Assembly (NCBI GenBank): GCA_973895155.1
Contig: OZ316898.1
Location: 20,595,292 to 20,659,291, forward strand
From: Marsupella aquatica
Lineage: Eukaryota; Plantae; Marchantiophyta
DNA: 64,000 bases
Direction: 5' to 3'
Shown: piece after piece, positions 37,801 to 55,200 of the stretch
Numbering within the stretch: the stretch's first letter is position 1
How the letters are laid out: every line of letters begins with the position of its first letter
Translations under genes and position numbers: made by a program
The notes under the pieces: model-generated
Database searches by the model: none
Seen by the model: only the letters and a program-made list of their open reading frames with translations
Told to the model about the DNA's origin: nothing

Positions 37801-37974
37801 CAAGAAGTCCTACCTGGAGAGGCTAGTGGTAATCATAGAAAAGCTGCCAAATTGAAAGTTGTAGTGCAAATGAGTCCATGTCTAAAATCTTTCAGGTGGT
37901 CTCCCTTTTAGCACCTGCGCATACCACAACCACACATTAGACACTTCAGAAATTATAAAGCCACTACCTACCAC

Positions 37975-38149
37975 TGTCGTGACATATAGTATCGTAGTCA
38001 TAGTGTATCGAAAACATACAAGTCACCGGCAATGCATATGTGCAAGTTGCTAGCAACCAACATCCTGAGAAAAAGTCCAATCACATTCACAAGTGCCAAG
38101 AAAAAGCAACTGAGGTGGTATGTACGTAGTGGAGGTGTAAACCTCTGTA
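37975..38149 (-). repeat. 3' LTR (about 175 bp) of the Gypsy element
   Basis: Follows the PPT and matches the solo copy at 17933-18106. Ends in CA on the minus strand and appears to start with TA. Confidence 0.7.
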
Positions 38150-38190
38150 TCCCCCCCCAGACCACAACCAAAAGGAGGGCTGAAGAAAAT

Positions 38191-39531
38191 TCAGGTAGCA
38201 CGTGGAGCACAGGAAGGGCAAAACCATAACCCTTCTGGCACCTGGGTAAGTTCAGGCCGAAGGCAGAAAAGATGGTACCCTCCATTGCAATTGTCACACA
38301 GCAGCATCTGGTCAGCATCATCAATTCGCAAACACACTTTGCAAGGGTAGTCCACAGGTGGAATCCAAGTAGAAGTCACAATGGTGGGATCCAGGTTAGG
38401 CAGATGACAAGGGGTGCAATTCTTGGCATTGTCAGCAATTGTGCGCCCATCTGCCCCTTGTAACTCTAGCACTCCAGACGGTCGAATAGCTTTGACCCTG
38501 AGAATAGTGCGACTGGTAGAGGTGTCCAGGGTGTCGTTAGCTTGCCGCTGCAAGTACACAAAATCTCCCACTTCAAACTTCTTGACCTTGGGCTGAAAAG
38601 TGCCCCCTCGTGTGTGTGCATAACGTAGTGTGTCCCTGTGCTGGGCAATGGCCAAATTCTCCATGGCCATGGGCATAACCCTCCTGAATAGGGCAGCCCT
38701 CTCAGAGATCACATCAGACCAAGTCACAGCTGAATCCAAGTCCACCACCTGAAGTATGTGAGAAGCAATAGCAGAAGGTGGAATTGGGTGACGACCAAAC
38801 AACAAGAAGTAGGGAGAAAAGTTAGACAGTGATGCATGTCTAGACATCCTATACCCCATGGCAATGTAGGGTAAGGCCAGGTCCCAATCCTCCTTGTTTT
38901 TGGTGAGGCAGATCTTCCAAAGGCCCTTCTTGCATGTCTGAACCATGCGCTCTGCCAAGCCATCTGCCTGTGGGTGATCTCATGATGTCCGGCGATGATC
39001 AATGAGAGCCTGATCAAGCAGCTCCTGGAACTCTCCTCTAAACTCTGAGCCCTGGTCAGTGAGACATTCTGCACAAGCTCCAAAGCGGCTTAGAACTTGT
39101 TGTAGGAATGCCTGGCTGGTGCTACGGGAGGTCTTATCCGGCAATGCCACAAGTTCTATCCACTTGGAGAAATGCTCTATCATGATCATGATGTAGAGAT
39201 TACCCCGAGATGTGAGGGGTAATTCTCCAGCCAAATCACATGACCAACGATAAAACATGCCCTGAATAGGGAGTGGATGAAGTGTGGGTTGCCGAGATGT
39301 GAAAGAAGTCCTTACCCTATCACACTGCTCACACCGGGCAATAACATCTCGAACCTGGCCATGCATGCCTCTCCAATGATAATGGGGGACCAAGAGGCTA
39401 TAAGTCCTCTTAACACCAAAATGACCAAGCTCAGAATGTACCTTACGGATAAGGCCAACCCTCTCATGAATGGGTGGAACCACCACTTCCCTGTCTGGCA
39501 AGCAGCGGACAAGATGATCTCCCTTCCACAA
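38191..39531 (-). pseudogene. Gypsy integrase (HHCC + DDE) with C-terminal PHD finger
   Basis: HSELGHFG...CEQC, WSCDLAG, TDQGSEF, HPQADGLAERMVQ, FEVGDFVYL, then CKVCLRIDDADQMLLCDNCNGGYHLFCLRPELTQVPEGLWFCPSC (C4HC3). In-frame TGA at 38980. Confidence 0.92.
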
Positions 39532-39564
39532 GTAGCGCTTGGACCTTTGCTGAATTTGGTCTCT

Positions 39565-41180
39565 CTAGGCAGCAGTAACATGGGTGGGGTACTCCCCATC
39601 CTGCAGAAATCTCAGAGTGTCGCTGTCCTCCCATATGTTCACCACAGGTTGGTCAACGATGTAGCATGGTAGCAAAGCAAGATAGGTAGATGCATGAAAT
39701 GTAGGCAGGATGGAAACCTGGTCAAAATCCTGCCGTGCATCTGAGGGATCATCAGAGGCAATCAAAGGGCTGCGGGACATAGTGTCAGCATTTTGATGTG
39801 TCACACCAGGCCTATGAATTACCTCAAAATCATACTCCTGGAGTATGAGTGCCCAACGAGCAAGCTTGCAAGTAAGCTTGTCGTTGGTCATCAACCACTT
39901 CAAGGGCTGGTGGTCGGTGTAGAGAACAAACCTGGTCCCATAGAGGTAGGGCCTATAATGTATGACAGCCCACACAACAGCAAGGCATTCACCCTCATAA
40001 GAAGAATAATGACTCTCTGCCTGATTGTTGCTCCTGGATGCATAGGCAATGACGTACTCTTTACCTTCCTCATCATGCTGGCCCATAATGGCACCAATCC
40101 CAAGGGCACTCCAATCCGAGCTCCAATCTGTGTGTAGCACAAAGACCTTGCTGAAATTAGGTCTTCTCAGCACCGGGTATTCTGAGAGCTTTTCCTTCAA
40201 AGTGGCAAATGCTGCCTCAGCATCTGTACTCCATGTCCAAGTCACATTCTTTTTCAACAAAGCATACAATGGGTGTGCAATGGTACTGAAATCTTTGATG
40301 TAGATCCGGTAGTAATTGCACAACCCAATAAAACTCCTCAAAGTGTGAACATCGGTAGGAGTGGGCATTTCCAAGATGGATACCACCTTGGCCCAGTGAG
40401 CCATGGTTCCATTTGGAAGAATGCGATGCCCAAGATATACTACTGATCTGACAGCAAATTCACACTTCTTGGGGTGTATCTTTAGGTTCACCTTCTTAAG
40501 CCTCATGAATAGCTCCTCAAGGTCAAGTAGATGCTGGTCAAATCCTTTGTTGTGGACCAACACATCATCAATGTAGCATTTCAGAAACTCAGCACCTTGA
40601 AGAACCTGGTCCATGACTCTTTGAAAGAATATGGGCGCATTCTTCAAGCCAAATGGCATCACCAACCACTCCCATAGTTGGTTACTACCATGGAAAGCTG
40701 TTTTCTTGCGGTCCTTTGCAAGCAGCAAAATCTGGTTGAAGCCTTGCCTTAGATCCACAAGAGTGAAGATGTCTGAGTCTCCAATGCTGTCAAATAGCTC
40801 CTCTGGCCGCGGCATGGGGTACCTATCCTGGGGTGTGACCAGGTTCAATGGCCTGTAGTCCCCACACATGCGCTTCTCTGTCCACAATCCACTGGAATCC
40901 TTCTTTGCTGGCATCACTGTAGCTGCCGCAAAATCTGATGTAGATGGCTGAATAAGACCAGCTTCATAAAGCTTTTGGCACCTATCATCCACCAGCTACC
41001 ACTCATGCTTACTCAAACGGTGTCTCCGCCTGAAGATAGGTGTTTCATCAGCCAACTCAATGGAGAACTGCATAGTCTTGCACTTACCCAAGTCCTTCAT
41101 AGAGAAAGCAAACACATTCTCATGCTTGAGGAGCAAATTCAGCAGCTGGTCCTTCTGTCTTTTACTCAGGTGGTTGCCCA
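39565..41180 (-). pseudogene. Gypsy reverse transcriptase + RNase H
   Basis: RMCGDYRPLN, DLRQGFNQI, MPFGLKNAP, YIDD, LRSFIGLCNYYR, HTDWS, YSSYEGECLAVVWA, TDHQPL. In-frame stops at 40996 and 39565. Confidence 0.95.
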
Positions 41181-41539
41181 TGATAAATGTGTAGTTGGCA
41201 ACACTAGGAATAGGACCTGATGTACTCATGCTTGAAGAGCCAGAAGTGCCAGCCTCTCCATTGTCCAAGCTGCTAGCATGCTGCTGATAAGGTGATGAGG
41301 CCTCTCCAAGGCCTGTTGTACCTGCTGATCCGAAGTGGTCCACACCATGAAACTCAGAAATAATGTCAGCCGCATTACAAGGGACCTCCTCCCCCCAACA
41401 CTTGGACTGAAGTGGTGAGTGTTGGACAGAGGTAAGTGCACCTGGTCTGGATGCCATGCAGTGGCACTGTGGAGTGGTAGGACTGGAGCTCCTAATGCTG
41501 GAGGAATGTACATCTGAAAAAGGATGCAAGTGACCAGAA

Positions 41540-42480
41540 GCCAAGTGAGAGCATTGAGATCCATTACCCTGCCAAGTAAAGCATTCCTGGCTAGCCTGGT
41601 GATTTTGGTGTGACCTGTAGTACCGGGTTGGAAGCCCATAGCTCGTTCTCTCTCCTCAGGACTAGGTTCATCCCATGTACCGGTAGAATGTCGATAAACC
41701 AGACCAGGATCATCACCCTGAAAAGCATGTGCACCTGGAAAGGACACAAATGTAGGCCAAGCAGCACGGGGTTGTCCAATGGTATTGGCTGGATTCTAAG
41801 GTGCTGGCTCTTGCCGTGTAACTGGTTGGCAAGAACTGTCAAGATCCAAAATCTGGTCCACTATGAGGTTAGTGTCCCTGGATGTGTGGTGAAGAGCTAA
41901 CTCCAACAAGGAAGGTGGTGCAAGGTTAGTCCAAAAGTTACGAAGACGATGTGCATAAGAACCACAATGCACTGCATCAATGAGAAGGGGTGGTCCCAAG
42001 TAGTGTTGGACCACACTGAAATCCTCTTTGACCTATGGACGCTGGTCAAACTGAGATGGAGTATTCTCAATGATATAACCAACAACAGGATAAAGGGATT
42101 GAGTCCAGGTGAGAATCTGAACCAATGCTGTGAAAAGGCCAGAACGAGAATCATGCAGCCCAGCACCGTGACCAGCAGCTGAAAACCCTTGGCATTCCCA
42201 ACCAGCTATGATCAAATCAAGGGAGCCAAGAAGGGTTAAGTGCCGATGCTGGACAAGCTAGATATCAGGAGAAAAGAAAGAAAATGCAGACTTCCATGCA
42301 CTGTGTGGAAACTGCTGGGGAAATCGCTCTGAAAATTCCAGCAGACGAGATTCAGCCACTTGCCTTGCACCTGGATCAATATCCACATAGATGTACTGCT
42401 TCACCACCATGCCAGACTGTAGGAGAGCTTCCAGGCCTGTAGAAATGCCACCAAAAAGCTCAAGCAATGTAAGGCCATCT
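41540..42480 (-). pseudogene. C5 cytosine DNA methyltransferase domain (DNMT3/DRM-like) embedded in the Gypsy pol
   Basis: One reading frame across TAG stops at 42258, 42033 and 41796. Motif I LELFGGI, II VDID, IV IAGWECQGFS, V DSRSGLF, VI IIENT, VIII IDA...AHRLRNFWTNL, IX ERERAMGFQPGTT, X RNALLGRVM. Confidence 0.88.
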
Positions 42481-42759
42481 GAAGGAGGAGTCCATGTAAC
42501 TGGTGCGCTCAAGATTGGGGCTATTGGTTGTCCATTATGCTGCCCAAGGTCCTCAAATTTGTGCAATGCAGCCACCAAAGGTCCATGGGCTGCTTGGAGC
42601 CGTTGTACCACCTCTGGTTGATGATCCACGTTGCTGGAAAGTGCTGCTATACGTGCAACAGCATGTGCAGTAGCCACCTCATCATCATCCTCCTCAATCC
42701 AATCTTGCAATGGGTGGTTGACATAGGTAGCTGCACGTGCACTACTTTCAACACACAGT

Positions 42760-43717
42760 GGTGAGCCATAGGTGTATGGACACCATGCAAATCAAGTGGA
42801 ATGTAGCCCAAGTGTGAGCCATCTGTATGCCAATCAACTCTGTAGTATGCATGCTCGTGCCAGTTGTCAATGGTAAAAACCGGTGGGAACAAAGCCTCCT
42901 GGCCAATGAGCACATCATACGTAGTGGCATTGGTAACCAAACATCTAACTGGGAAATGCAGTTCCTGATCTGTACCTCCATTAAAAGTGAGAGTGAGTAA
43001 AGTAGAACTCTCACCCAGCACATCCTCCACAGTGCCACTAGCAGTCCGAATGTGCCACCTGGATTGCTGTAAATGATCAGTCAGCAGTCCCATCTTCTTG
43101 GCAAATTGAATGCCCAAGATTACTGGTTGAGCGTCTGTGTCTAGCATGACCACTGGAGGAGTGTGACCCTCCAACTTGACTACTGAATTCCTGTTGTCAA
43201 CAATGGCAATGGTGGTGGAAACTAAAGTCCTGTCACTAGGCACCACTTTTGGCAAATGATGAGGTACCTTGTGAAGGGAGTTAGTGTCCACGGTCTTCCC
43301 ACTCAACAGCATAGCCAGGAAAGATGGAGCAGCATGACCAGAATCAAGTGTAGCTCTGGTCACCCAATCTGCAGCAATACTGTCATCTCTACCACTGGAA
43401 ATCGGTACTGGGATGGCCAAACCAGTGGAAGCATGCAATGGAGAAGAAGAAGGTCCAGTATTTACATGAGATTGGACCTCCAAAACCGGTGTCACAGGGG
43501 CTGATGAAGAATGCAGTGAGCCCTCTAGCGCTCTGATGACAGCTCTAGCATCCAGTTGTAAATCATGGCAACTGAAAAGTGGAGTGGTAAGAATCCTTTG
43601 TGCCATACCGGAGGTGAAATGCTCAAGCAGCTCAGGAAAAACAACTCCCTGTGAAATGTCAGCAGCACCTGGTGGTGGAATGGATGTAGCTGTAGCTCCC
43701 TCCCCCCTCGCCAACAA
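42760..43717 (-). pseudogene. Gypsy aspartic protease region
   Basis: VMLDTDAQPVILG (DTG mutated to DTD), IRTASG flap, YDVLIGQEAL. Frameshift to the methyltransferase frame near 42750. Confidence 0.8.
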
Positions 43718-43995
43718 GGTGCGCTCTTCAGCAAGTGTGAGTGGCTAAAAAGATTGGGGCATGACAGCCCGAGCTCCCCTGGCTCTAGTCATAGGACCAG
43801 CAGCAAGACCATCAGCTTGTACAATGCGGCGTGTGGGAGCAATACGGGAGGTAGCACTGGCCTGCTGGTAAGCAAAATAGGAAGGGCATAATGAATCTGA
43901 AAATTCTGCTGTAAGGCCAGGTTGTGTAGTAGAGGACAACACACACTCACCCATATGAGCATCAAATGGCAAGCCATAGAAAGAGCGGGGTATGG

Positions 43996-44434
43996 TGTTG
44001 GGTATTTACTCTTACGTCTAGGTTAGGTATGACGTGGTTGGTACAACTACGTGGTTAGGTACAACTACGTGATTAGGTACAACTATGTGGTTAGGTACAA
44101 CTACGTGATTAGGTACAACTATGTGGTTAGGTACAACTACGTGATTAGGTACAACTATGTGGTTAGGTACAACTAAGTTGCACACTATATCATAAGAGGC
44201 ATGTGTGCTTGGAGAGGTAGAACCAAGGCTCATTGTTATGGAGCCACTTGAGAGATAGGGAGAGCTTACACTGTGGAGACTCGGTATAGCCGACGGGCTT
44301 AGAGTTCAGTAAAGCTCTCTTGTGTGTTCCCGTGGACGTAGCCTCAAGGAGGTGAACCACGTATCTCTTGTGTCGACTATTGTGCGTTGGATGGTTCATG
44401 GGCTTGCCGTTGCGATCGTCGTCTATGCTCAACA
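43996..44434 (+). repeat. Copia 5' LTR with 18-bp tandem array
   Basis: TGTTGGG...CTCAACA. GTACAACTA(C/T)GTG(G/A)TTAG repeats at about 44041-44175. A TATA-like TATATCATA follows. Confidence 0.95.
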
Positions 44435-44436
44435 AT

Positions 44437-44448
44437 TGGTATCAGAGC
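44437..44448 (+). other. Primer-binding site (tRNA-iMet)
   Basis: TGGTATCAGAGC lies 2 nt after the 5' LTR. Confidence 0.93.
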
Positions 44449-45589
44449 ATGCTTGGGAGGTGACGTGTGTTCGTGACGGGATTTCATGACGGTTTTTCCA
44501 GCGTTGAGTGTTGGTGGATTTTCCAGAGTTCCATCGCATGGAACTTGGAGTTTATGGGCTCAACGGATAGATCAGGGCAAGAGCTTTCTAACGGTGTGAA
44601 GAAATCGTTGAACGGAGCTCGTGGTGCATAGAGATCTAAGTTTTCGTCGTTCTGGATTTTGTGAAGAAAGTTGGCAATCGACTCGGAGGGAGAAGCATCA
44701 AGTGTTTTGACTCAACGGAGAGATTGAGGCAAGACGATTGTTTTTGAGTCCGGGATTGGCTCTTTGATGCAAAGAGGAAGGCTAAGCAAAATCAATTACC
44801 TTGTTGGACTTGGTGACGGCACCAAGTGCAATTGATCAACATTCGTTGTTGACAAGGTACCATTTTTTTCTCTTTGAAAAACTGATTCGAAATTGGCTAT
44901 GGCAATTGAGAGAAATCTGTCATCTTTACCAATTTTTTTCTCTCTCGTTCTTTCCTCGTTTTGGGTGCTTCTTATATCGATCTTCATCGCCTCGGAGTCT
45001 AGTTTCCAAATCTGAAATCGGATCTTGATTTCGTCAAAACCCGAGTGAGATATCTTGCGTTTGGTGTCGAGGGGTACATTCTGCCGTGTGTATTTTCTGC
45101 GCGCGCGACCAGATTTCGACGACGAAGGGTGGTAGGGGGTTTTGGGGGTTCGAGGACACATGTCAGCCCCTCGATTGTTCTTCCAAAATTCCCACAGGGC
45201 CTGTACAAGGGTCATAGAATATTCCAAAAAAACCAGAGAGCTATTTTTTGATCGTCCGACAAAGATTTCATCCGCCGAACGGTAACTTTTTTGGTTATTT
45301 TTCGGCGAGGTCGTAGCCATTGAAGTTGGCAATGCAGCGCACCAATCACATCGCAATTCCGACAATGGGTTGTACTTGGTATTTCGGTTATTCCCTGAGG
45401 TGGTCAAAACGGGGGAGTTTCCCAAGGTTTTACCCACCTCGACCGAAATTTGAATAACTTTTCCGTCAAATTTCGATTTTGATTTTGGTTTTCAGTATTG
45501 GACTCCTAGCTTTGTGGGCTACGCGGCGATGTTGAGTTTCGAGTTTTTTGAGAAGTTGTGAAAAACAACATTTTTTGTGACTTTCTCAT

Positions 45590-46624
45590 ATGAGTGATTC
45601 GGAGGAGTTTTTCGAAGACGTGGAACTTGAAGCACGAGGATCACCGCGGAGGTTTCAGGGGCAGAGAGAGGAGCAGGAGGAAGAGCACGTGACACCGATA
45701 CCATCACCGGTGCGGCGTGTGGTGGAGGAAGCAGTACTACTACCGGAGCTCACGGTAAAGAAGAAGATGGGGACTTTCAAGCTTGGGGGACCCAAGTATG
45801 AAGTGACAAAGTATGATGGGCGCTCTGACTACTTGCTATGGGAGAAGTAGGTGAAGGGAGTGCTTTATGCGTCAGGGATGGGCCAACTGCTGAGCCCTCG
45901 TGAAGACGATGTTGATGAGAAACAATGGGACCGCATGCAGGAGCAGGGAGTGTGGTGTGTTACACTCTATCTCATGCCTCCCATCATCAAGCAGTTAGGT
46001 GCACATAAGGATTGCATGTCCTTGTTTGCGGAATTACAGAGCAAGTATCACCGCAAGGAGTTGTCGAACCGGCTCTACACTTCCTACAAACTGATGAGTT
46101 TCAGGATGAAGGAATCTGGTACGAAGTTGCAAGACCATGTGGATGCTTTCAACGACATGGTCGTTGACTTGGAAAACCTTGGGGAGACTTTGAATGATGA
46201 GACGAAGGCTCTGCAGCTTCTTAGTTCATTGCCTCCATCTTACCAGTCCCTATCACGAGTGTTGTTGCATCGTGATAGGGATACCATTTCATACAATGAC
46301 GTGGTAAGTTCTCTGCTTAGTGATGATCTTCAGCAGAAGATGCACATCACGTCACAGCCTTCATCATCTGGTGCTGCCCTCAATGTCAACCGTGGGAGGA
46401 GTATGCAGCGACCAACTGGGGACCGTAGAACCCAGTTTAGATCTAAATCCAGATCTAAGTCCAAGGGTAAATCCCCTCAGAGGAGGCAGGTGACATGTTG
46501 GAAGTGCAACCAAGTTGGACACTTCAAGCGAGACTGTAAGGGAAAGGCAGCGGAAACTTCATCGGCAAATGTGGTTAGGGCTGATGGAGAAGCTGATTTA
46601 CTCAATGATGAGTATGTTTTATGA
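45590..46624 (+). pseudogene. Copia gag (UBN2-like + CCHC zinc knuckle) with one internal stop
   Basis: KYDGRSDYLLWEK*VKGVL, LLSSLPPSY, CWKCNQVGHFKRDC. TAG at 45848-45850 and TGA at 46622-46624. Confidence 0.88.
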
Positions 46625-49600
46625 AGCCGGAGGTATACCCTGTGCACGTCATCTAGGAGAGCAGATGATGTGTGGATTCTTGATTGTGCTTGCTCTTTTC
46701 ATATTTGTTACATTCGTGAGTTTTTCAGTTCTTACTCTGTTTCAAACGGTTCAGTTCTGATGGGAAATGATCACTCCTGTCAAATTGAGGGAATTGGGTC
46801 TGTGAAGATTCAAATGTTTGATGGCGCTGTGCGCACAGTGTCCGGAGTCAGGTATGTACCTGGCATGCGTAAGAATCTGATTTCACTCGGTGTGTTGGAT
46901 TCAAATGGTCATCAATGGAGCGTTATTGATGGTGAACTTCAAGTCAGGTCGGGAGAGACAGTGATTTTGAAGGGGAGTAGACAAAAGAATTTGTATGTGT
47001 TACAGGGCAATACTGTATGTGGAGAGGCCAATGTAACCAAGTCTCACGAGGAGATGACTCAACTGTGGCATTCACGGCTAGGCCACATGAGTGAGAAGGG
47101 TTTGGCTATCTTACGGAAGAATGGACTCATTTCTGATTTGCAATCTTGTAAATTAGAGTTTTGTGAGCATTGCATTCTTGGAAAGCAGCATCGTCGTGCT
47201 TTTGGTGTTGGAACTCATCGTTCCAAAGCGGTTCTTGAGTACATACATAGTGACGTGTGGGGTCCATCCCCGACTCCCTCACACTCTGGAAAGTTGTACT
47301 ATGTATCATTTATTGATGATTACTCAAGATTTGTGTGGATTTATTTCATGACGCATAAGTCTGATGTCTTGTCCATTTTTAAGAAGTGGAAGGCCCAGGT
47401 GGAGAATCAGACTGGAAACACGATCAAGTGTTTGGATACAAGGGTGAAGAGTCTGAGGTCAGACAACGGCGGGGAGTACACTTCAATGGAATTTGAAGAG
47501 TACTGTTCAGAACAGGGGATAACTCGCCATCTCACCACAGTTTATACTCCGCAGCAGAATGGTGTCGCTGAGAGGCTCAATCGGACACTGTTGGAGCGGT
47601 CACGGAGTATGTTGAGCCAATCAGGTTTACCACAAGAATTTTGGGCAGAAGCTGTCAATACCGCAGCTTATTTGGTAAATCTTTCTCCTTCTAGTGCTAT
47701 CAATTTCAAAACGCCGTTTGAGATGCGCTATAAGCGGCAAGCAGACTATCATGGCTTGGTAATTTTTGGAAGTGATGCATATGCTCTCACACCAAAGCAG
47801 AATAGGACCAAGTTGGATCCTACCTCCAGGAAATGTGTTTTTCTTGGGTACCAGAGTGGTGTGAAAGCCTATAGGCTATGGGATCCTATTGCCTGTAAGC
47901 TCGTTGTCAGTAGGGATGTTTCCTTCAATGAATCCAGATTATTGAAGGAGGGGGAGAATACTCAGGTCTCCCGTACTGACAAAGGAAAATCTCCTATCCC
48001 GGATCTCGTTGAGGGGGAGATTGGTTATGAGGTGCATGACCGGAGAGAAGGAGTTGCTCCAATTATGGAGCTGGTTCCTGTGCCAGAGGAACCAGAGGAG
48101 TTTGTTGATGCTGGTGAGCAACAAGTGGATGCTGTTGAGCTTCAAATTGTACCAGCACACACAGATCAACCGGAGTCATCGGCTAGAAGAACATCTGGTC
48201 GCACTGTACGCGCTCCATCAAGGTATGGACAGTGGGTTGATTCATCTCAACTGCAAGAGGATGATTTTACAGCTGATGATGAGGGTGATGCGTTAATTTT
48301 GGAAGAAGGAGAACCTTCTTCATTTCATGAGGCAAGTGCTTCAAAAGAGAAGCAGAAGTGGACTGCAGTAATGCAAACGGAGATGCAGTCACTAAAGGAC
48401 AACAAAACTTGGGAGCTTGTTAAGCTGCCTAAGGGTCAGCAAGTGGTGGACAGCAAGTGGATTTACAAGCTGAAGGATAATTCCATAGGAGGTGGATCGA
48501 AGGTCTACAAGGCTAGATTGGTAGCAAAGGGATTCACACAAGAGAAAGGTGTGGATTACAATGAGGTCTTCTCACCAGTTGCTAAGTACTCTACAATACA
48601 ACTATTGTGTGTACTTGTTGTAATGTTTGGTCTGCTCCTAGATCAGATGGATGTTGTCACAGCTTTCCTCTATGGCACATTGGAAGAGGTGATCTTCATG
48701 AGACAACCGCTAGGTTTTGTGAAGAGAGGACAGAAGGAATTGGTTTGCAGATTGCTGAAATCCTTGTATGGGTTGAAGCAGTCACCAAGACAGTGGAACA
48801 AGCGGTTTGACGATTGGATTCGGTCACAAGGTTTTCACAGAAGTGTATTTGACCCTTGTGTGTATTTGAAACCGGTGAAGAATGTTGTCTTTGGGTTCAT
48901 TGTTTTAGTACTTTATGTGGATGACATGCTAATTGCAGCCAAGGATAGGTCTGAGATTGTTAAGCTCAAGGCACTGCTTAGTGCAGAGTTTAAGATGAAG
49001 GACTTAGGGCCAGCTAAGAGGATTTTGGGTATGAAGATCACTAGGGACTTGGAGGCTGGCAAGCTATGGTTGACGCAGAGCAGTTATGCGAGGAAGGTAA
49101 TTGCAAGGTTCAACATGGAGAATAGCAAGCCAGTAAGTACCCCGTTGGCTCCACACTTCAAGTTATCATCAGCGTTCTGTCCTACGGATGACACAGAGAA
49201 GGGGTTGATGTCAAAGGTTCCATATGACAAGGCAGTGGGGAGTCTCATGTATTTGATGACTTGCACTAGACCTGATCTTGCCATGGCTATGGGCAAGGTG
49301 AGCAGGTACATGTCGAATCCAGGGAAGGTACACTGGGAAGCAGTGAAGTGGATTATCAGGTACTTGAAGGGTACCGTGGATCATGGTCTTTTATTTGATG
49401 CGAATGCAAAGAATGCTAGATCATTGATTGGCTATGTAGATTCTGACTATGGACAAGATTTGGACCGAAGGAGATCAACAATAGGATACGTGTTCACACT
49501 TGGCGGTGGATGCATAAGTTGGAGGTCTACTTTGCAGAAGTGTATTGCTCAGTCTACTACAGAAGCGGAGTATGTTGCAGCTGCGGAAGCAGCAAAGGAA

Positions 49601-49897
49601 GCGATTTGGTTGGATAGACTTATCACTGAAATGGGATTGCCACAGGGGAATGTGAAGCTCCATTGTGATAGTCAAAGTGCGCTCCACCTTGCTGTGAACC
49701 AGGTGATGGACAGCAAAGTGAAGCACATTGACGTCAGGTACTATTTTATCAGGCAGACTGTGTCTGATAATTTGTTTGAGCTAGTCAAGATTGATGGTAA
49801 ACTCAACCCGGCTGACGCATTTACCAAAATGATTCCTTTGGAGAGTTTCTCTAGACACCGTGACGTATTGCAGGTTTTGCAATTGCATCACAAGTAG
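46625..49897 (+). CDS. Copia pol (protease, integrase, RT, RNase H), open and in the same frame as gag
   Basis: WILDCACSFH, LWHSRLGH, HSDVWGP, RSDNGGEY, QQNGVAER, KARLVAKGF, LYVDDML, YVDSDY, STTEAEY, KHIDVRY. Confidence 0.95.
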   Translation, partial: SRRYTLCTSSRRADDVWILDCACSFHICYIREFFSSYSVSNGSVLMGNDHSCQIEGIGSVKIQMFDGAVRTVSGVRYVPGMRKNLISLGVLDSNGHQWSVIDGELQVRSGETVILKGSRQKNLYVLQGNTVCGEANVTKSHEEMTQLWHSRLGHMSEKGLAILRKNGLISDLQSCKLEFCEHCILGKQHRRAFGVGTHRSKAVLEYIHSDVWGPSPTPSHSGKLYYVSFIDDYSRFVWIYFMTHKSDVLSIFKKWKAQVENQTGNTIKCLDTRVKSLRSDNGGEYTSMEFEEYCSEQGITRHLTTVYTPQQNGVAERLNRTLLERSRSMLSQSGLPQEFWAEAVNTAAYLVNLSPSSAINFKTPFEMRYKRQADYHGLVIFGSDAYALTPKQNRTKLDPTSRKCVFLGYQSGVKAYRLWDPIACKLVVSRDVSFNESRLLKEGENTQVSRTDKGKSPIPDLVEGEIGYEVHDRREGVAPIMELVPVPEEPEEFVDAGEQQVDAVELQIVPAHTDQPESSARRTSGRTVRAPSRYGQWVDSSQLQEDDFTADDEGDALILEEGEPSSFHEASASKEKQKWTAVMQTEMQSLKDNKTWELVKLPKGQQVVDSKWIYKLKDNSIGGGSKVYKARLVAKGFTQEKGVDYNEVFSPVAKYSTIQLLCVLVVMFGLLLDQMDVVTAFLYGTLEEVIFMRQPLGFVKRGQKELVCRLLKSLYGLKQSPRQWNKRFDDWIRSQGFHRSVFDPCVYLKPVKNVVFGFIVLVLYVDDMLIAAKDRSEIVKLKALLSAEFKMKDLGPAKRILGMKITRDLEAGKLWLTQSSYARKVIARFNMENSKPVSTPLAPHFKLSSAFCPTDDTEKGLMSKVPYDKAVGSLMYLMTCTRPDLAMAMGKVSRYMSNPGKVHWEAVKWIIRYLKGTVDHGLLFDANAKNARSLIGYVDSDYGQDLDRRRSTIGYVFTLGGGCISWRSTLQKCIAQSTTEAEYVAAAEAAKEAIWLDRLITEMGLPQGNVKLHCDSQSALHLAVNQVMDSKVKHIDVRYYFIRQTVSDNLFELVKIDGKLNPADAFTKMIPLESFSRHRDVLQVLQLHHK

Positions 49898-50088
49898 AGT
49901 TTTCTTAAACATTCATTGTAATTACTGATATATGCTCTTCCTCATTCCTATGTATTAGGCTACGGCTTAGTTCTGGTTTGCTCTAGTTAGAGAGGGAAAC
50001 CGGTTTGGTTTCTGTCCAGAACTTCCCGCTGAGGGATCATATACATTGGCAGTATTACTCTCCCCTAGACCAGAGTCAAGGGGAAGAT

Positions 50089-50527
50089 TGTTGGGTATTT
50101 ACTCTTACGTCTAGGTTAGGTATGACGTGGTTGGTACAACTACGTGGTTAGGTACAACTACGTGATTAGGTACAACTATGTGGTTAGGTACAACTACGTG
50201 ATTAGGTACAACTATGTGGTTAGGTACAACTACGTGATTAGGTACAACTATGTGGTTAGGTACAACTAAGTTGCACACTATATCATAAGAGGCATGTGTG
50301 CTTGGAGAGGTAGAACCAAGGCTCATTGTTATGGAGCCACTTGAGAGATAGGGAGAGCTTACACTGTGGAGACTCGGTATAGCCGACGGGCTTAGAGTTC
50401 AGTAAAGCTCTCTTGTGTGTTCCCGTGGACGTAGCCTCAAGGAGGTGAACCACGTATCTCTTGTGTCGACTATTGTGCGTTGGATGGTTCATGGGCTTGC
50501 CGTTGCGATCGTCGTCTATGCTCAACA
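50089..50527 (+). repeat. Copia 3' LTR
   Basis: Matches the 5' LTR. Preceded by the PPT AGAGTCAAGGGGAAGA. Confidence 0.95.
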
Positions 50528-50532
50528 TATGG

Positions 50533-51298
50533 GTGCTGAACTGTCAGTGGTGCCTGGGCCAGGGATGGGTTGCACGTGACCAACCGGTTGAGAAGGACCA
50601 GCAGAGGCAGTGGACTTGCCTTTGATGTTGGCAAGTTGGGCACGTAATGACTCAACCTCATGAGTCAGAGACTGGAGTTGAGTTGCCTGTGCGTTGTGAG
50701 CCTCCTTCTGAGCTGGTGGCTTTTGTTGCTGCTTAGGCAATTTGTTGGCACTGGTTGCTTTGCCACTGGAAGGAGGAGCAACCGATGCAGTAGGAGCCCT
50801 CCTAGCTGGTGGGGGAGTGGAAACAGGAGCAGGATGAGTGGCTTGTTGTCATAGCTGCTTCCTCTCTGGGAATTTGGCAAAACAAACTGCCTCCAAGTGG
50901 CCCACTTTCCCACAAAAATCACAAGACAGGTCCTCAGCAACAATATCACATTCATTAGCCTTGTGATTAGGATTGCCACAGTAGTTGCAAGATGGCAGCA
51001 TGAAAGCAGCATGTGCTGGTTTGGTCTTGGAAGCATACTGTGGCACACGGGAAGGGGTGGCCATTGTAGGAGCAGCAGCCTGGTACCTGGATCGCGGTGG
51101 ACGCGCAATATTGGCCTCATAATGTGCATGGGCCAACTCAAGTTTCTCAGCAGTATCATAGACATTGAGCAGGGTGTAGTTGTCTCCAAACTCTGAGAAT
51201 ACTTGCTGCAACACTTGCGAATGGAGAGCTGGTGTGCCCTCCAATGCGCGAAGATAGCGATGAGCAGCTTCCAGGTCAGTGATGCTTTGGGTGTCCTC
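50533..51298 (-). pseudogene. Gypsy gag fragment with two CCHC zinc knuckles
   Basis: CNYCGNPNHKANEC and CDFCGKVGHLEAVC. Bounded by the Copia TSD on one side and the CACTA terminus on the other. Confidence 0.8.
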
Positions 51299-52245
51299 CA
51301 CTAGAAGGAAATGATGTTTTTATTACTGAAAAAATGACTAGCTTATGAGTGGTTTGGGACAATTTACAACTCATTCATTTGAGTTCACAAAGGCAAGTCG
51401 CTTTGGTATAGTAGTCCTTTTGGACATAGAGTTGTTTTTATCAACAACTGCAAATTGCAGGTTGTTTATGACACCGTCCATTGGGAGACTGACGGTCTTA
51501 AATAACTCAAAATCTTAGTTGAATTGTGTTTCGTTAAAAAGAACTGATGGTCTTAAATAACTTAAAATCAGAGTTGAATTGTGTTATGACTCATCAAATA
51601 AGGAAACGACATGTGTCTAAAGCCATCAAATAGCATTTAGACACGTGGAAGGTCTGAGCCACACAAACCAAATTACAAGTGGACACGTGTCTCCTTTATA
51701 TCATCCCAGCAGCCAACAGGTGACACTTTGATAGCTTAATTCCTAGTAGGGTACACGTGGAGATAATTGTAGTTATTTAGGACATGTTTATAATGACTAC
51801 TATCGGAGTGATTTTGTTGATGTCTTATATTACCAATATTTGAGTCTTTTCTGCTCAGTCATTTATGACTTCATGGAAGTTATTTAGTTAGTCCTTTGTG
51901 TCATTTCATAATTGGACCAATTCTCCCAATTGGTCCTATTTCCAATCATCCTGACAAATTGTCTAGCTAGAAAGACATGTCTTAGAAATCAACTGCAAGA
52001 GGATATATACATTGCAAATATACACAAAAAGCCATTGAATGAATATAAAATTCTGCATAGAGACTGTAGACTTCATTTCACCTCCAATGTACAGGTGATC
52101 GACTGTTCAGAATCACAGTAAAGTATTTCCTGGATGAACTAATCACAAAACAAGTCTATTGGCCAACTCAGCTTGTGCATCAAAACTACTCGAGCTTGAA
52201 CCAAAGAGCTCAAGTCACTACATTCTATCAAAAAACAACTCCTTG

Positions 52246-55200
52246 CTACTTCCTCATCAACTTCTGGTACCACAAGAAATGTTTGTCGCCCACATCCTTC
52301 AGAAATTTGACCTGAGAGTTTGGATGCTCTTTCTCAAGTAGAGGTGCATCCTGTTCAAACACCTCATTTGCAATCACGATCAAATGTCCTGGTGGAATTT
52401 CATTGCCATTGTAAAAATCTTGCCCCCAGACTCCCTGCACTGTTGCAAGAGCAACAACCCGAGAGTCCACTGGGGACTTCAATTTCACCACGTCCCCAAT
52501 CTTGAACTGCCAGCAGTAAATCAATATATTACGGCTAATTTAATGAGAGACCATATTTTTAATCTGTGGTGCCAATGAACCCTTGGCTTGCAACAATACT
52601 GATGCGCGCCATTTCAAGGGATGTAATCACTGCTAAGTGAATCATGCATAATGCAGGATAGTGAACAGATGCAAAATGATAGTAATTAATTTAGAAAAGG
52701 AGAAATCTATGAAGATTGTCACCTTCAACACAGTTGGTGAAGACGCTGACTTCAGAACATCCGTACTTAGAGGTCTTGAAGGGGTTGGGTGTTCTGAGAT
52801 TGTTTCATTGCCCTCTTCAAGAGCCTGCATGATTCCCACCTTTGGCATCTGATCAAGTGAAAAATTAGACAAACTTAGACTGAGAGCATAGAGTCAGGTG
52901 TGCATATATATTGGACTGAAAAAAATTCTACATACTGTGCATATTCCACTCGAACATCCACCATCCACGTACAAGACATAGAGCTAATTTGTAAGAACAC
53001 AAGCCTGAGAAAACTTTGAATGTACACAATTCCTGAGCCCCTGCGCTAAGCACCTTGTCACAAAGTTTGCATCTATACTATGAGATAGTTGAGTGCAGCA
53101 CACAAACCTTACCTTTCCTTTAGGTTTTCGGCCCTTGCCTGTCTTAGGAGTTAGTTGAGGTGAACTGGAGATAAGGACCTTTCTGGGATCATCTAAGACC
53201 TCCTGCTTTACAGTCACAGAGTGACTATACTCCGCATCGTCCATCAGGTCTTTCTGCTCCGCACCTTCCTCACCGACATGGACATATATTATTCAATTTT
53301 TCAGATGATCGAAATGCTTTTACAAATCATTTGCATTACAATGATTTTACAAAATTAAGCTCTTAATTTTCGATCACCCAGAGCAAATGGTCATGACCTA
53401 GCTTAGAGTACAAATTAGACAGACATACCCTCTTTGGACAGATCCACAAAATTCAACTTCATTGCAGAACTCTTTGGTGCTGAAGTGCCCGATGCAGCCT
53501 TAATTGTGGAAGTGGGTAGGCTTGACGTACCAAGTGCTCCAGGTCCACCACCCCCCTCTTGGGAAGCTTCAATATTGATACCTACCCCTCCTACATGAGA
53601 TGTCTCCTTCTGATGCAAAACACTCATATGTTGCTGGTAATTTCCCAAGCTCTCTGCAATTGTCTTAGCCACCAGTGCCAACCCAGCAGCTAAAGTAGTA
53701 TTGATAGAACTGGTTATTTTCTCACAAATCACTTCATCATTTCGCTCAACTACAAGGTTGGATACAGGTGTCTGGAAAACCACAGTGAGTAAAAAAATTA
53801 GCCATATACAGCCACTTTGTGTCCTCTTAAAATATTACCCGAGACAGGTGTACTTACAATATGGAAAGGAAGAGAAAGAAACTCACGATTGAGTTCCTCC
53901 CTAGCTGGTGAGCAGGTGTACCAAGGATGGACTTAGTACTTGCCAAGGATGGGCTTACATCTGACCTCCAACCCAAACCATTTGCTTTGTCATCAAAAGG
54001 ATTAGGTCGAAGGTCTGATAGACCTGGGCTATGACCTCTCTGCCTCTTCTGAAAAAGGCAGGAACAACTATCAGCACAATAATGCAATCAAACATTTATC
54101 AGCACACTCAGAGAATGTATGGCACAAACTGAAAGATGATCATGTCATAAGGGTTAGCACACTCACATAAATTGCCTCCCTCCCACGATAGCCACCTCGT
54201 CCAACTTTAGATGGATTCTTCACTTCTGCTCTCGCTCTAGTCATTTTCTGAATGTTGGTTAGTCCTTCTGGGGACAACCACCACTCACAAAGTGTTTTCC
54301 ATTGCTCAGGCTTGACATTTTCAGGAGGCTTCTTGTCCAAGCGCTTCCCAATCGCTTGAAAATGCTTGTGAAGTTTTGCACGTTGAGCCTTCATTATTTT
54401 TGACAAGTGGGACCTGAACTTCTTCTCAGACAAAGTCCCCCTACATACTGCCAATTAGTAGCCATCACATCATACAAATGGATAATAATGTCCTTGTCTT
54501 GCTTAGCAATGTTACACACGGAAGGGTCGAGTCTGCCAACACAAGCTGCACGAAGGTCGTCTGCCCAACGTCCCCGGAACTGGTCACTTGCATCAATATC
54601 GTCATTCCAAATCTGCACACGAGACATCATTGTCGATTGTGATTGATTCAAACTAACCGATGCTGTCAGTAGGATAAAGGTCGGGGCTGTTTCCAACTTC
54701 TATTTAAAAATTGGCAAGCATCCTATTTTGATCCTATGTTGATCTGCTAGAAGAGTTTGAATTAAAGTTGGCATGATACCTGAATACTTGCTTTCATCAT
54801 GCCCATTTTACTTCGCTCAGCTGTGTGATCCACCCAATGTTTCTTTGCAGCTCGAGACATCTGCCGCATAATTGACTGTTGGGACGGTCCACTTGCACTG
54901 GCCATCATAGCACTTCCCTGAGGGATAGGGGTCACTACAATATCAAAGATTTACATCTTAGTTCAGACTTAGAATTTGCCACCAATATACTTGAACCCTG
55001 ACTTGAACTTGGCATTAAGCCTTGCAACGTACATTGACAAGTAATTAACAGCCATGGTCATCCCATCATATTTTACATTCAATCACAATCATAGGCTGTG
55101 TCATATTCAAATTCATACATAGCTAATGTAAAGAAGCTAGTATAGGTGGAAACTTACGCAAGCTGACAACTCCCGTGACGGGATCTTTATAATACTTAGC

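What the first reader, a model, noticed from the sequence alone, without database searches (positions are those of the whole stretch)
41540..42480. LTR retrotransposon carrying its own DNMT3-like cytosine methyltransferase inside pol
Seen: the conserved C5-MTase motifs (I LFGGI, IV GWECQGFS with the catalytic Cys, VI ENT, VIII HRLRNFWTNL, IX-X ERAMGF..G.T/LLG) occur in canonical order. They lie in one frame, between the aspartic protease and RT of a Ty3/Gypsy element. Known: motif VIII-X wording resembles DNMT3/DRM catalytic domains, and DNMT-carrying retrotransposons have been reported in dinoflagellates and the charophyte Klebsormidium. They are not part of the standard land-plant Gypsy domain set. 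Inference: the enzyme would be released by the protease into particles and could methylate cDNA or integration sites, giving self-marking, mimicry or evasion of host silencing. Motif IV has EC in place of the usual PC.
Basis: partly seen in the sequence, partly recalled or inferred. Interest (0 to 1): 0.95.

Follow-up and report, generated by a model that had tools for sequence, protein, structure and literature searches.

The report
Dead Gypsy retrotransposon carrying DNMT3 methyltransferase
This is a broken copy of a plant jumping gene whose polyprotein includes its own DNMT3-type DNA-methylating enzyme and a histone-reading PHD finger. This kind of element was described in an alga in 2018; here it appears in a land-plant genome, with intact relatives in the model liverwort Marchantia.

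Summary
On the minus strand, 42647-41496 encodes a complete, non-permuted C5-cytosine methyltransferase domain. Motifs I, IV, VI, VIII, IX and X lie in order in one frame. The domain sits between the aspartic protease and the RT of a Ty3/Gypsy-type element whose integrase ends in a PHD finger.

- **DNMT3-type.** A family profile hits DNMT3A/3C/3B first (E 4e-26), with DRM far behind. A confident model of the closest intact relative superposes on DNMT3A/B (TM about 0.8).
- **Not a one-off capture.** The same PR-DNMT-RT order occurs in intact polyproteins of Marchantia, Closterium and many environmental contigs. Marchantia copies show dN/dS 0.16 on the DNMT, as on RT.
- **This copy is dead.** It has three in-frame TAGs in the DNMT, three more stops in pol, two frame changes, a substituted protease active site, CpG o/e 0.25 and a nested, very young Copia.
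- **'EC' for 'PC' in motif IV** is a family-wide variant, not decay.

The kind is known (KnitGypsy-Dnmt3 of Klebsormidium, 2018). This scan has already reported the family many times on other DNA of this genome.

New here: chlorophyte relatives carry the DNMT elsewhere (RT-RH-DNMT-INT-PHD). What the enzyme does for the element remains untested.

The parts
50849..51301 (-). gag remnant with CCHC zinc knuckle (CX2CX4HX4C at 50948-50989). It is separated from the rest of the element by the nested Copia.
   Evidence: Pfam zf-CCHC E 2.4e-4. tblastn of P0167 residues 181-353 onto 51304-50864 and of P0188 residues 371-450 onto 50989-50729. Motif coordinates.
43996..50527 (+). Nested Copia retrotransposon that splits the Gypsy element between gag and PR. 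It is not part of the DNMT element. Both LTRs are 439 bp (43996-44434 and 50089-50527).
   Evidence: The LTRs are identical (0 mismatches). The target-site duplication TATGG lies at 43991-43995 and 50528-50532. The primer-binding site TGGTATCAGAGC lies at 44437-44448. The 1075-aa pol ORF 46670-49897 carries RVT_2, rve and gag_pre-integrs.
42647..43717 (-). Aspartic protease ORF. The active-site motif reads D-T-D (43127-43144) where eight relatives have D-[TS]-G.
   Evidence: Pfam gag-asp_proteas E 7e-5 and Asp_protease_2 E 5e-4, both below gathering score. tblastn of P0188 residues 643-823 onto 43237-42683, E 5e-22. Alignment with eight relatives.
42683..42760 (-). Frame change between the PR frame and the DNMT frame.
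   Evidence: The frames are shown. Most other copies in public runs differ in length by 2 letters at 42734/42735 (table 4), so the change is private to this copy or to a minority.
41496..42647 (-). DNMT3-type C5-cytosine methyltransferase domain, motifs I-X in canonical order in one frame. It is interrupted by three in-frame TAG codons (42260-42258, 42035-42033, 41798-41796).
   Evidence: Profile against PDB. Fold of the closest intact relative.
41226..41496 (-). Linker between DNMT and RT, containing the second frame change. No stop codon lies in either frame here, so this lineage has no stop between DNMT and RT.
   Evidence: Other copies differ in length by 1 letter at 41390 (nearly all depth in run X6, about a fifth in X1, table 4). 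For contrast, TAG-CAA stops are found in L006, L004 and L009.
39565..41211 (-). Reverse transcriptase (YIDD at 40564-40575) and RNase H. In-frame stops at 40998-40996 (TAG) and 39567-39565 (TAG).
   Evidence: Pfam RVT_1 E 4e-28 and RT_RNaseH E 1e-34. Stops. tblastn of P0188 residues 1336-2349 onto 41211-38194, 53% identity.
38980..39531 (-). Integrase zinc-binding (H2C2) and catalytic core domains. In-frame TGA at 38982-38980.
   Evidence: Pfam Integrase_H2C2 E 1.4e-14 and rve E 8e-14. Stop.
38191..38958 (-). Integrase C-terminal region ending in a PHD finger (38209-38343). The natural stop TGA is at 38193-38191.
   Evidence: Pfam PHD E 2.8e-12. Best PDB sequence matches are WSTF (2.5e-15), CHD4, KDM5 PHD1, ATXR5, BAZ2A/B, PHF21A, UHRF1 and AIRE.
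37975..38150 (-). 3' untranslated segment just after the stop. A second copy, 89% identical, lies at 17933-18107. The true 3' end of the element was not found.

Best explanation
The stretch is the methyltransferase domain of a dead copy of a 'Gypsy-DNMT3-PHD' retrotransposon.

**Shown**
- The element lies on the minus strand in the order gag(CCHC) - [nested Copia] - aspartic protease - DNMT3-type C5-MTase - RT - RNase H - integrase - PHD finger.
- The same order is found uninterrupted in relatives (a single 2358-aa ORF, P0188). In Marchantia it appears as ORF1 gag-PR-DNMT, then one in-frame TAG, then ORF2 RT-RH-INT-PHD.
- The DNMT domain is inherited with the element. The DNMT and RT trees give the same deep split.
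- The DNMT is under purifying selection as strong as on RT.
- This copy is inactivated by six premature stops, two frame changes, a protease active-site substitution and the Copia insertion. Its CpG depletion fits long-term methylation.

**Inferred for the active family (not shown)**
- The polyprotein is cut by its own protease. This places many DNMT molecules, made with or next to Gag, in the particle.
- There, or at integration, the DNMT methylates the new cDNA or its insertion site, so that a new copy enters the genome already marked. My odds are about 40%. A role on host DNA or a self-limiting role gets about 30%, and another or non-catalytic role about 30%.
- The PHD finger on the integrase probably steers integration to nucleosomes with unmethylated H3K4 (about 50%). 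This would be analogous to the chromodomain of chromoviruses.
For: - **Domain order and homology:**
- **DNMT3 type:** phmmer of Marchantia P0167 gives DNMT3A/B/C as its first 25 PDB hits. The profile A1 gives DNMT3A 3.9e-26, DNMT3C 1.4e-25, DNMT3B 6e-24, DRM 1e-14, M.HhaI 1e-10, and no DNMT1 or CMT below 1e-3. The AlphaFold2 model of the closest intact relative has pLDDT 89 and pTM 0.89. Every row of the Foldseek list shown (ranks 1-50) is DNMT3A/B/C, E 1.6e-18, with TM 0.80-0.84 against the catalytic-domain chains.
- **Family-wide:** 447 proteins at E<1e-3. Named members come from Marchantia polymorpha (at least 10), Sphagnum jensenii and Closterium. Thousands of contigs at 85-100% identity occur in four public runs.
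- **Selection:** dN/dS on the DNMT is 0.16-0.17, against RT 0.08-0.20 and PR 0.14-0.22, among three Marchantia copies. This matches Ka/Ks<0.2 reported for Klebsormidium (PMC5890265).
- **Catalytic residues:** the catalytic Cys, the following Gln, the ENV Glu-Asn and the motif VIII Arg are invariant in 18 domains. The window keeps 29 of 30 invariant columns.
- **Decay of this copy:**. CpG o/e is 0.25, against 0.65 in the Copia and 0.76 in a nearby gene, and 0.71-0.75 in three intact relatives.
- **Breaks are not family-wide:** most other copies differ from this one at the third DNMT stop and at the PR-to-DNMT frame change; at the DNMT-to-RT frame change nearly all depth differs in run X6 but about a fifth in X1.
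- **PHD type:**. By established knowledge, most of the best-matching solved PHD fingers read the unmodified H3 tail. The H3K4me3 reader TAF3 comes last.
Against: - No RNA run holds the element, so expression of the family in this organism is not shown.
- No methylation data were available, and enzyme activity is untested.
- About a third of family members, this lineage included, have Glu instead of the near-universal Pro before the catalytic Cys. This could lower or change activity.
- No LTRs or terminal repeats could be found for this copy, so its ends are unknown.
- The CpG depletion could partly be a lineage trait, because one intact relative (L009) has CpG o/e 0.31.
- No Klebsormidium sequence was retrieved, so kinship with KnitGypsy-Dnmt3 rests on shared architecture and on the paper's description.
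Confidence: 0.88

Rival explanations
1. One-off event: a host DNMT3 gene or pseudogene fragment was captured by, or inserted into, this single Gypsy copy, so the DNMT is not part of the element's normal gene set.
For: This copy is heavily damaged and already holds one nested insertion, the Copia. Frame changes flank the DNMT on both sides.
Against: - The same PR-DNMT-RT order is collinear with intact single ORFs (P0188, P0192) and with Marchantia ORF1/ORF2.
- Most other copies in public runs lack the PR-side frame change; the RT-side one is absent from nearly all depth in X6 but only about a fifth in X1.
- The DNMT and RT trees are concordant.
- dN/dS on the DNMT is 0.16.
- There are no introns and no duplication at the domain borders.
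Confidence: 0.02
2. The family's DNMT domain is kept for a non-catalytic or altered role, for example DNA or SAM binding, targeting like DNMT3L, or RNA methylation. The reason would be that the Pro of the catalytic 'PC' dipeptide is replaced by Glu in this lineage.
For: ECQ occurs in 69 and PCQ in 111 of 214 family members. ECQ is found in long intact ORFs of both architectures. De Mendoza et al. found that one retrotransposon DNMT (SymbioLINE) did not methylate DNA in yeast and suggested RNA as a substrate.
Against: - The catalytic Cys, the motif VI Glu-Asn, the motif VIII Arg and the motif IX/X residues are invariant.
- All ten motifs and the DNMT3 fold are complete.
- DNMT3L-like proteins have lost these residues.
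- Marchantia members keep PCQ.
Confidence: 0.15
3. The enzyme acts mainly on host chromatin rather than on the element's own cDNA. It could imitate gene-body methylation or silence neighbouring DNA. Or it may be kept because it lowers the element's own activity and so spares the host.
For: Both ideas are raised in PMC5890265. The PHD finger shows that the element interacts with chromatin. In Marchantia the DNMT is on the Gag side of the stop, so it is made in excess over RT and IN.
Against: There is no direct evidence either way. Fusion to Gag-PR favours packaging into particles, where the cDNA is the nearest substrate. This is inference.
Confidence: 0.3
4. The Marchantia 'genes' and their relatives are domesticated host genes derived from a retrotransposon, and the window holds a pseudogene of such a host gene.
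For: They are annotated as ordinary protein-coding genes (Mp_4g09160, Mp_8g17980; UniRef calls one a DNA (cytosine-5-)-methyltransferase).
Against: - Each is followed in frame by an RT-RH-INT-PHD ORF and flanked by A ... B-A-B repeats.
- They are multi-copy and occur at different loci.
- The window copy has gag, PR, RT, RH and INT around the domain.
Confidence: 0.03

Closest known systems
KnitGypsy-Dnmt3 of Klebsormidium nitens (de Mendoza et al. 2018, Nat Commun 9:1341, PMC5890265)
   Same: - Gypsy-type pol with a non-rearranged DNMT3-type domain inside the polyprotein.
- No introns, conserved catalytic residues, and Ka/Ks below 0.2 (0.16-0.17 here in Marchantia copies).
- Repeats arranged like those of a DIRS element (A-coding-B-A-B). 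I found this arrangement in three Marchantia relatives.
   Different: - The host here is a land-plant-type genome.
- This copy is dead and no terminal repeats are detectable for it.
- The paper's text does not give the domain order or mention a PHD finger.
- No Klebsormidium sequence came up in my searches, so direct kinship is untested.
Chlorophyte Gypsy elements with RT-RH-DNMT-INT-PHD (Haematococcus lacustris, Scenedesmus sp. PABB004, Chromochloris zofingiensis, Chlamydomonas eustigma; database proteins, found in no paper I could search)
   Same: - DNMT domain 38-43% identical, with the same special motifs (GW[PE]CQ, ERERAMG).
- Same RT, RNase H and integrase families, and the same C-terminal PHD finger.
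   Different: - The DNMT sits between RNase H and integrase, not between protease and RT.
- The two architectures are separated by one branch on both the DNMT tree (support 89) and the RT-RH tree (support 100).
Catalytic domain of mammalian DNMT3A/3B/3C
   Same: Best sequence and fold match. Motif order is I-X, not permuted. The catalytic Cys, ENV and RxR are present.
   Different: - Only about 22% identity.
- No PWWP or ADD domains.
- A longer region between motifs VIII and IX.
- Glu for Pro before the catalytic Cys in this lineage.
- It is part of a retrotransposon polyprotein.
Plant DRM (domains rearranged methyltransferases)
   Same: DNMT3-related. It is the second-best group in the profile search (E 1e-14 to 4e-13).
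   Different: DRM motifs are circularly permuted, and here they are in canonical order. The scores are 12 orders of magnitude weaker than for DNMT3A.
Chromoviruses (Ty3/Gypsy elements with a chromodomain at the integrase C-terminus)
   Same: A histone-reader module is fused to the end of the integrase, probably to direct integration.
   Different: Chromoviruses carry no DNMT.
SymbioDIRS-Dnmt3 of dinoflagellates (PMC5890265)
   Same: A DNMT3-type domain inside a retrotransposon pol, with split direct repeats.
   Different: It is a DIRS element with a tyrosine recombinase, not a DDE integrase. The host kingdom and the acquisition event are different.

Membership tests
C5-cytosine DNA methyltransferase (Pfam PF00145) | Significant match to the family model | tested here: met
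   The 60-aa motif IV-VI piece scores 25.2 bits against a gathering score of 22, E 1.3e-5. The other pieces are too short to score alone, but they align to intact family domains at E 9e-74.
C5-cytosine DNA methyltransferase (Pfam PF00145) | Catalytic motifs I (FxGxG), IV (PC with catalytic Cys), VI (ENV), VIII (RxR), IX and X in order | tested here: met
   All are present in order in one frame. Motif IV has EC instead of PC and motif VI has ENT instead of ENV. Both are common family variants (ECQ 69 of 214, ENT 54 of 214).
C5-cytosine DNA methyltransferase (Pfam PF00145) | Open reading frame able to give an enzyme | tested here: not met
   Three in-frame TAG stops lie in the domain and frame changes lie on both sides. 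This copy is a pseudogene. Intact relatives exist.
DNMT3 subfamily | Closer to DNMT3 than to DNMT1, CMT, DNMT2, DRM or bacterial enzymes | tested here: met
   Profile A1 gives DNMT3A 3.9e-26, DNMT3C 1.4e-25, DNMT3B 6e-24, DRM 1e-14, M.HhaI 1e-10 and DNMT2 3e-8, with DNMT1 and CMT absent. Every row of the Foldseek list shown (ranks 1-50) is DNMT3A/B/C. No tree with cellular plant DNMT3 could be built.
DNMT3 subfamily | Non-permuted motif order (unlike DRM) | tested here: met
   The order is I, IV, VI, VIII, IX, X along the frame.
DNMT3 subfamily | Companion reader domains of cellular DNMT3 (PWWP, ADD) | tested here: not met
   No PWWP or ADD domain appears in the window ORFs or in any family polyprotein scanned. 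A PHD finger sits on the integrase instead.
Ty3/Gypsy LTR retrotransposon | Domain order gag - PR - RT - RNase H - integrase | tested here: met
   Pfam hits in that order on the minus strand, with the extra DNMT between PR and RT and a PHD finger after the integrase.
Ty3/Gypsy LTR retrotransposon | Two long terminal repeats in direct orientation with a target-site duplication | tested here: not met
   No repeat pair flanks this element. Marchantia relatives have A ... B-A-B split repeats rather than classical LTRs.
Ty3/Gypsy LTR retrotransposon | Primer-binding site and polypurine tract | not tested
   The ends of this copy could not be located.
Gypsy-DNMT3 retrotransposons (de Mendoza et al. 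2018) | DNMT3-type domain inside the pol polyprotein of a Gypsy-type element, without introns | tested here: met
   Intact relatives carry it in one ORF.
Gypsy-DNMT3 retrotransposons (de Mendoza et al. 2018) | Purifying selection on the DNMT among copies (Ka/Ks < 0.2) | tested here: met
   dN/dS is 0.16-0.17 in three pairwise comparisons of Marchantia copies. It was not testable among copies of the window's own genome.
Gypsy-DNMT3 retrotransposons (de Mendoza et al. 2018) | Sequence kinship with the Klebsormidium elements | not testable with these tools
   No Klebsormidium-named protein appeared in three homology searches. The paper's text and held supplements give no sequence or domain order.

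The most novel reading that the evidence does not exclude
Gypsy elements that pair a DNMT3-type writer with a PHD reader on the integrase form one ancient lineage of the green plants. In that lineage the methyltransferase module changed its place in the polyprotein once. Chlorophytes have RT-RH-DNMT-INT-PHD. Streptophytes, including liverworts, peat moss and Closterium, have gag-PR-DNMT-RT-RH-INT-PHD, where the DNMT is made with Gag. The lineage is intact in the model liverwort Marchantia, which would make the long-open question of what a transposon-encoded DNMT does directly testable by genetics.
Probability: 0.45. Interest if true: 0.65.

Novelty: new member of a known kind. Interest (0 to 1): 0.45.

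Why it matters
Cytosine methylation is the main way plants silence transposons, so a transposon that carries its own de novo methyltransferase is a paradox. Since 2018 the case has rested on one alga and on dinoflagellates, none of them easy to manipulate.

The family turns out to be abundant in a land-plant genome. It is intact, multi-copy and under purifying selection in Marchantia polymorpha, which can be transformed and has methylome resources. That makes the function of the enzyme experimentally approachable: self-marking of cDNA, mimicry or self-restraint.

Two further observations give a handle on how such modules are assembled: the chlorophyte form with the DNMT at another position, and the constant PHD finger on the integrase.

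The locus in this window is itself only a decayed relic. The scan has already met the family many times in this genome.

Tried and rejected
- **LTR search.** The repeat finder and blastn (word sizes 7-16) between the 3' side (35000-38300) and the 5' side (50535-56100), and within the element, found no terminal repeats. The element's ends remain unknown.
- **Organism identity.** Run names are coded. The Atlas says only Streptophyta for the neighbouring fucosyltransferase gene. The first Atlas search with the DNMT piece gave only generic DNA_methylase clusters.
- **Expression.** No RNA run holds the stretch, so expression could not be examined.
- **Hosts of environmental contigs.** Most relatives come from metagenomes without taxon.
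- **Klebsormidium sequences and cellular plant DNMT3.** None was returned by the three homology searches, which are word-filtered and length-limited. The DNMT tree therefore could not be rooted, and single versus double capture could not be decided.
- **Literature.** Searches for bryophyte or chlorophyte Gypsy-DNMT3 found only PMC5890265 and a 2026 preprint that mentions 'streptophytes (Gypsy-DNMT3)'. One search was uninformative.
- **Programmed frameshifts.** I considered that the two frame changes might be programmed -1 frameshifts. I rejected this because relatives are in one frame, most other copies differ in length exactly at the PR-side change, and other copies (nearly all depth in X6, a minority in X1) do so at the RT-side change.
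- **Natural leaky stop.** I considered that the TAG at 40998 might be the natural leaky stop. I rejected this because it lies inside conserved RT-proximal sequence where P0188 has a sense codon. The Marchantia-type stop lies further upstream.
- **Handling of breaks.** Proteins were never read through stops by reference. Pieces were searched apart, and X was put at breaks only inside scripts.
Full report
**1. What is in the sequence**

All features lie on the minus strand. Their coordinates are given in the observation check.

The frame is broken by three TAG codons, at 42260-42258, 42035-42033 and 41798-41796.

Support for the domain:
- Pfam's DNA_methylase model passes its curated threshold on the 60-aa motif IV-VI piece alone (E 1.3e-5).
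- M.HhaI is the best solved match of that piece, with GWECQGFS aligned on GFPCQAFS.
- The other pieces are too short to score alone. Intact relatives laid on the window by tblastn cover the whole domain (42647-41496) at E 9e-74 and 8e-72.
- The window keeps 29 of the 30 columns that are invariant in 18 family domains.

**2. The surrounding element**

Pfam and tblastn give this order on the minus strand:
- gag with a CCHC knuckle (50849-51301)
- aspartic protease (ORF 42647-43717)
- the methyltransferase
- RT with YIDD and RNase H (39565-41211)
- integrase H2C2 and core (38980-39531)
- a C-terminal PHD finger (38209-38343, E 2.8e-12)

A Copia element lies between gag and the protease (43996-50527). 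Its 439-bp LTRs are identical, it has a TATGG target-site duplication and a tRNA-Met-type primer-binding site, and its ORFs are open. It entered the Gypsy copy recently.

No repeat pair flanks the Gypsy element. Only a 176-bp piece just after its stop codon (37975-38150) recurs, at 17933-18107.

**3. State of this copy**

The damage beyond the three stops in the methyltransferase:
- Pol has three more premature stops, at 40998, 39567 and 38982.
- The protease, methyltransferase and pol parts lie in three different frames.
- The protease active site reads D-T-D where eight relatives have D-[TS]-G.
- CpG observed/expected is 0.25 with an excess of TpG+CpA (1.49). This compares with 0.65 in the nested Copia and 0.76 in the nearby fucosyltransferase gene, and with 0.71-0.75 in three intact relatives. 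One intact relative has 0.31.

Contigs of four public runs were laid on 38191-43990:
- Thousands of pieces are 85-100% alike, so the family is highly repeated in the source organisms.
- Differences are mostly transitions.
- Most other copies have another letter in the third stop codon (41797). They differ in length by two letters at 42734/42735, exactly at the first frame change. At 41390, the second frame change, other copies differ in length by one letter: nearly all depth in run X6, but about a fifth in X1.

At least one of the stops and the first frame change are therefore particular to this copy or to a minority. Together with single-ORF relatives such as P0188, the data point to a family form with protease, methyltransferase and RT in one frame. 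I only observed these differences.

**4. It is a family feature, not a one-off**

A full HMMER search with the 150-aa N-terminal piece found 447 proteins. Mapping the window's own domain pieces on all retrieved proteins shows the same PR-DNMT-RT order in:
- uninterrupted polyproteins (P0188, 2358 aa; P0192, 2374 aa);
- many ORF1 proteins gag-PR-DNMT, among them at least ten annotated Marchantia polymorpha proteins (Mp_4g09160, Mp_8g17980, MARPO_0063s0090 and others);
- a Closterium protein, and a Sphagnum jensenii fragment in which the protease and motif IX-X pieces matched in that order.

In the Marchantia chromosome-4 locus (L006):
- ORF1 (gag-PR-DNMT) and ORF2 (RT-RH-INT-PHD) are in the same frame and are separated by a single TAG.
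- Two environmental elements (L004, L009) have the same arrangement. In all three the stop is followed by CAA.
- The window's lineage has no stop there, like P0188.

Three Marchantia copies (L006, L010, L012) are flanked by A ... B-A-B split repeats. This is the arrangement that de Mendoza et al. describe for KnitGypsy-Dnmt3.

Nei-Gojobori dN/dS among these copies:

| Domain | dN/dS |
|---|---|
| DNMT | 0.16-0.17 |
| RT | 0.08-0.20 |
| Protease | 0.14-0.22 |
| Integrase | 0.16-0.35 |

The methyltransferase is as constrained as the core enzymes.

**5. Which methyltransferase**

- The Marchantia protein hits only DNMT3A/3B/3C among its first 25 solved relatives.
- A profile of 18 family domains gives DNMT3A 3.9e-26, DNMT3C 1.4e-25, DNMT3B 6e-24, DRM 1e-14 to 4e-13, M.HhaI 1e-10 and DNMT2 3e-8. 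Nothing comes up for DNMT1 or chromomethylases.
- An AlphaFold2 model of the closest intact relative's domain is confident (pLDDT 89, pTM 0.89). Every row of the Foldseek list shown (ranks 1-50) is DNMT3A/B/C, with TM 0.80-0.84 against the catalytic-domain chains.
- The motif order is canonical, unlike DRM.
- There is no PWWP or ADD domain.
- Glu in place of the Pro of the 'PC' dipeptide is not decay. Among 214 family members, 111 have PCQ and 69 have ECQ, including long open ORFs. ENT occurs in 54, against 104 for ENV.

**6. A second architecture**

Most long database relatives carry the methyltransferase between RNase H and integrase: RT-RH-DNMT-INT-PHD.
- All named ones are chlorophytes: Haematococcus lacustris, Scenedesmus sp., Chromochloris zofingiensis, Chlamydomonas eustigma, Monoraphidium neglectum and Cymbomonas.
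- All named PR-DNMT-RT members are streptophytes.
- On quick maximum-likelihood trees the two architectures are separated by a single branch, for the DNMT domain (SH-aLRT 89) and for RT-RNase H (100). On the RT-RNase H tree the window groups with P0188/P0208.
- DNMT domains of the two types are 38-43% identical to each other, against about 22% to animal DNMT3. Both types have the integrase PHD finger.

This fits one old DNMT-bearing lineage in which the module moved. Without cellular plant DNMT3 as outgroup, two captures cannot be excluded. The searches list only the best hits, so exceptions may exist.

**7. How it probably works**

Shown: the domain order, the conservation of catalytic residues, the purifying selection and the co-inheritance with RT.

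Inferred:
- The element's protease frees the methyltransferase from the polyprotein.
- In the Marchantia type the enzyme is on the Gag side of the stop, so it should be made in Gag-like amounts and packaged.
- The nearest substrate is then the newly made cDNA, so a new copy may be integrated already methylated. This is the idea put forward for DIRS elements in PMC5890265.
- My odds are about 40% for that reading, about 30% for action on host DNA or self-restraint, and about 30% for something else, including an altered activity of the ECQ form.

The PHD finger is most like WSTF, CHD4, KDM5 PHD1, ATXR5, BAZ2A/B, PHF21A, UHRF1 and AIRE. The H3K4me3 reader TAF3 comes last. From established knowledge most of these read the unmodified H3 tail. 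I therefore infer, at about 50%, that it tethers integration to H3K4-unmethylated chromatin, as chromodomains do for chromoviruses.

None of this applies to the window's copy, which is inert.

**8. Comparison with what is known, and novelty**

- The kind was described by de Mendoza et al. 2018 for Klebsormidium nitens. Later papers of the same group speak of 'streptophytes (Gypsy-DNMT3)'.
- I found no paper describing it in bryophytes or chlorophytes. The library does not hold everything.
- Earlier notes of this scan report the same family many times elsewhere in this genome. They note its presence in Marchantia and Sphagnum, the PHD finger, split repeats and the leaky stop. I re-tested those points on my own data and they hold, with one limit: the stop is absent in the window's lineage.
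- The chlorophyte architecture had not been noted in the scan.

The finding is a new member of a known kind. The locus itself is a relic. The family is of moderate interest because Marchantia makes it testable.

Noticed in passing
window 43996-50527: Copia retrotransposon nested in the Gypsy copy. It has identical 439-bp LTRs, a TATGG target-site duplication, a tRNA-Met-type primer-binding site, a 257-aa gag ORF and a 1075-aa pol ORF. It is a very recent insertion.
   Followed up: partly
L002, L008 and proteins P0237, P0243, P0242, P0259, P0264, P0309, P0311: Chlorophyte green algae (Haematococcus, Scenedesmus, Chromochloris, Chlamydomonas eustigma, Monoraphidium, Cymbomonas) hold related elements with the DNMT between RNase H and integrase (RT-RH-DNMT-INT-PHD). 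I found no paper describing these.
   Followed up: partly
L006 6826-17657; L010 3007-15662; L012 5289-16599 (Marchantia polymorpha): Marchantia copies are bounded by split direct repeats A ... B-A-B (A about 250-300 bp, B about 113 bp) instead of classical LTRs. They hold about 1-kb tandem duplications, in the 5' region in L010 and near the 3' end in L012.
   Followed up: partly
L010 and L011 7211-15258: Two Marchantia loci with different flanking genes hold an 8048-bp stretch of the element that is 100% identical. The shared stretch includes an in-frame stop in ORF1. This points to recent spread of a defective copy, possibly in trans, or to gene conversion.
   Followed up: no
L005 (period 8262 bp) and L007 (period about 8400 bp), ENA ERZ25067493: Long-read metagenome contigs flagged '_c' hold 2.2 head-to-tail units of an intact element (polyprotein plus about 1.2 kb). 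This means either tandem arrays or circular forms. It would fit the split-repeat, DIRS-like replication style.
   Followed up: no
L006 13835, L004 6000, L009 5408: In two-ORF members the single in-frame stop between DNMT and RT is TAG followed by CAA (then CAA, TCA or CCA), a context resembling known read-through signals. The window's lineage and P0188 have no stop there.
   Followed up: partly
protein P0269: A 455-aa protein that is 49% identical to the transposon DNMT of P0086 (a PR-DNMT fragment) is filed in NCBI as 'DNA cytosine methyltransferase' of a Candidatus Obscuribacterales MAG. It is probably a eukaryotic transposon fragment binned into a bacterial genome.
   Followed up: no
window 152-2558 and 56011-60858 (minus strand): Two CACTA/En-Spm-type transposase gene sets (Transposase_21 plus DUF4218). 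They are about 73% identical over 400 bp to each other.
   Followed up: no
window 21349-23187 (+): Open 612-aa ORF for a xyloglucan fucosyltransferase (PF03254, E 5e-56), with CpG o/e 0.76. It is a probable host gene and shows that the genome is a streptophyte.
   Followed up: partly
window 9374-11166 and 62605-64000: Two tandem arrays: units of 408 bp (80-98% alike, at least 4 units) and of 466 bp (99.6-100% alike, at least 3 units, running off the window's end).
   Followed up: no
window 4957-5703 (minus strand): A 248-aa ORF with NSD-like PHD fingers (PF22908, E 4e-9). It is unrelated in position to the Gypsy element, and I did not determine whether it is a host gene or a transposon.
   Followed up: no
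runs X7-X10: Air metagenomes hold 14-17% of the sampled words of the element. This would fit airborne spores or fragments of the source plant or a close relative.
   Followed up: no
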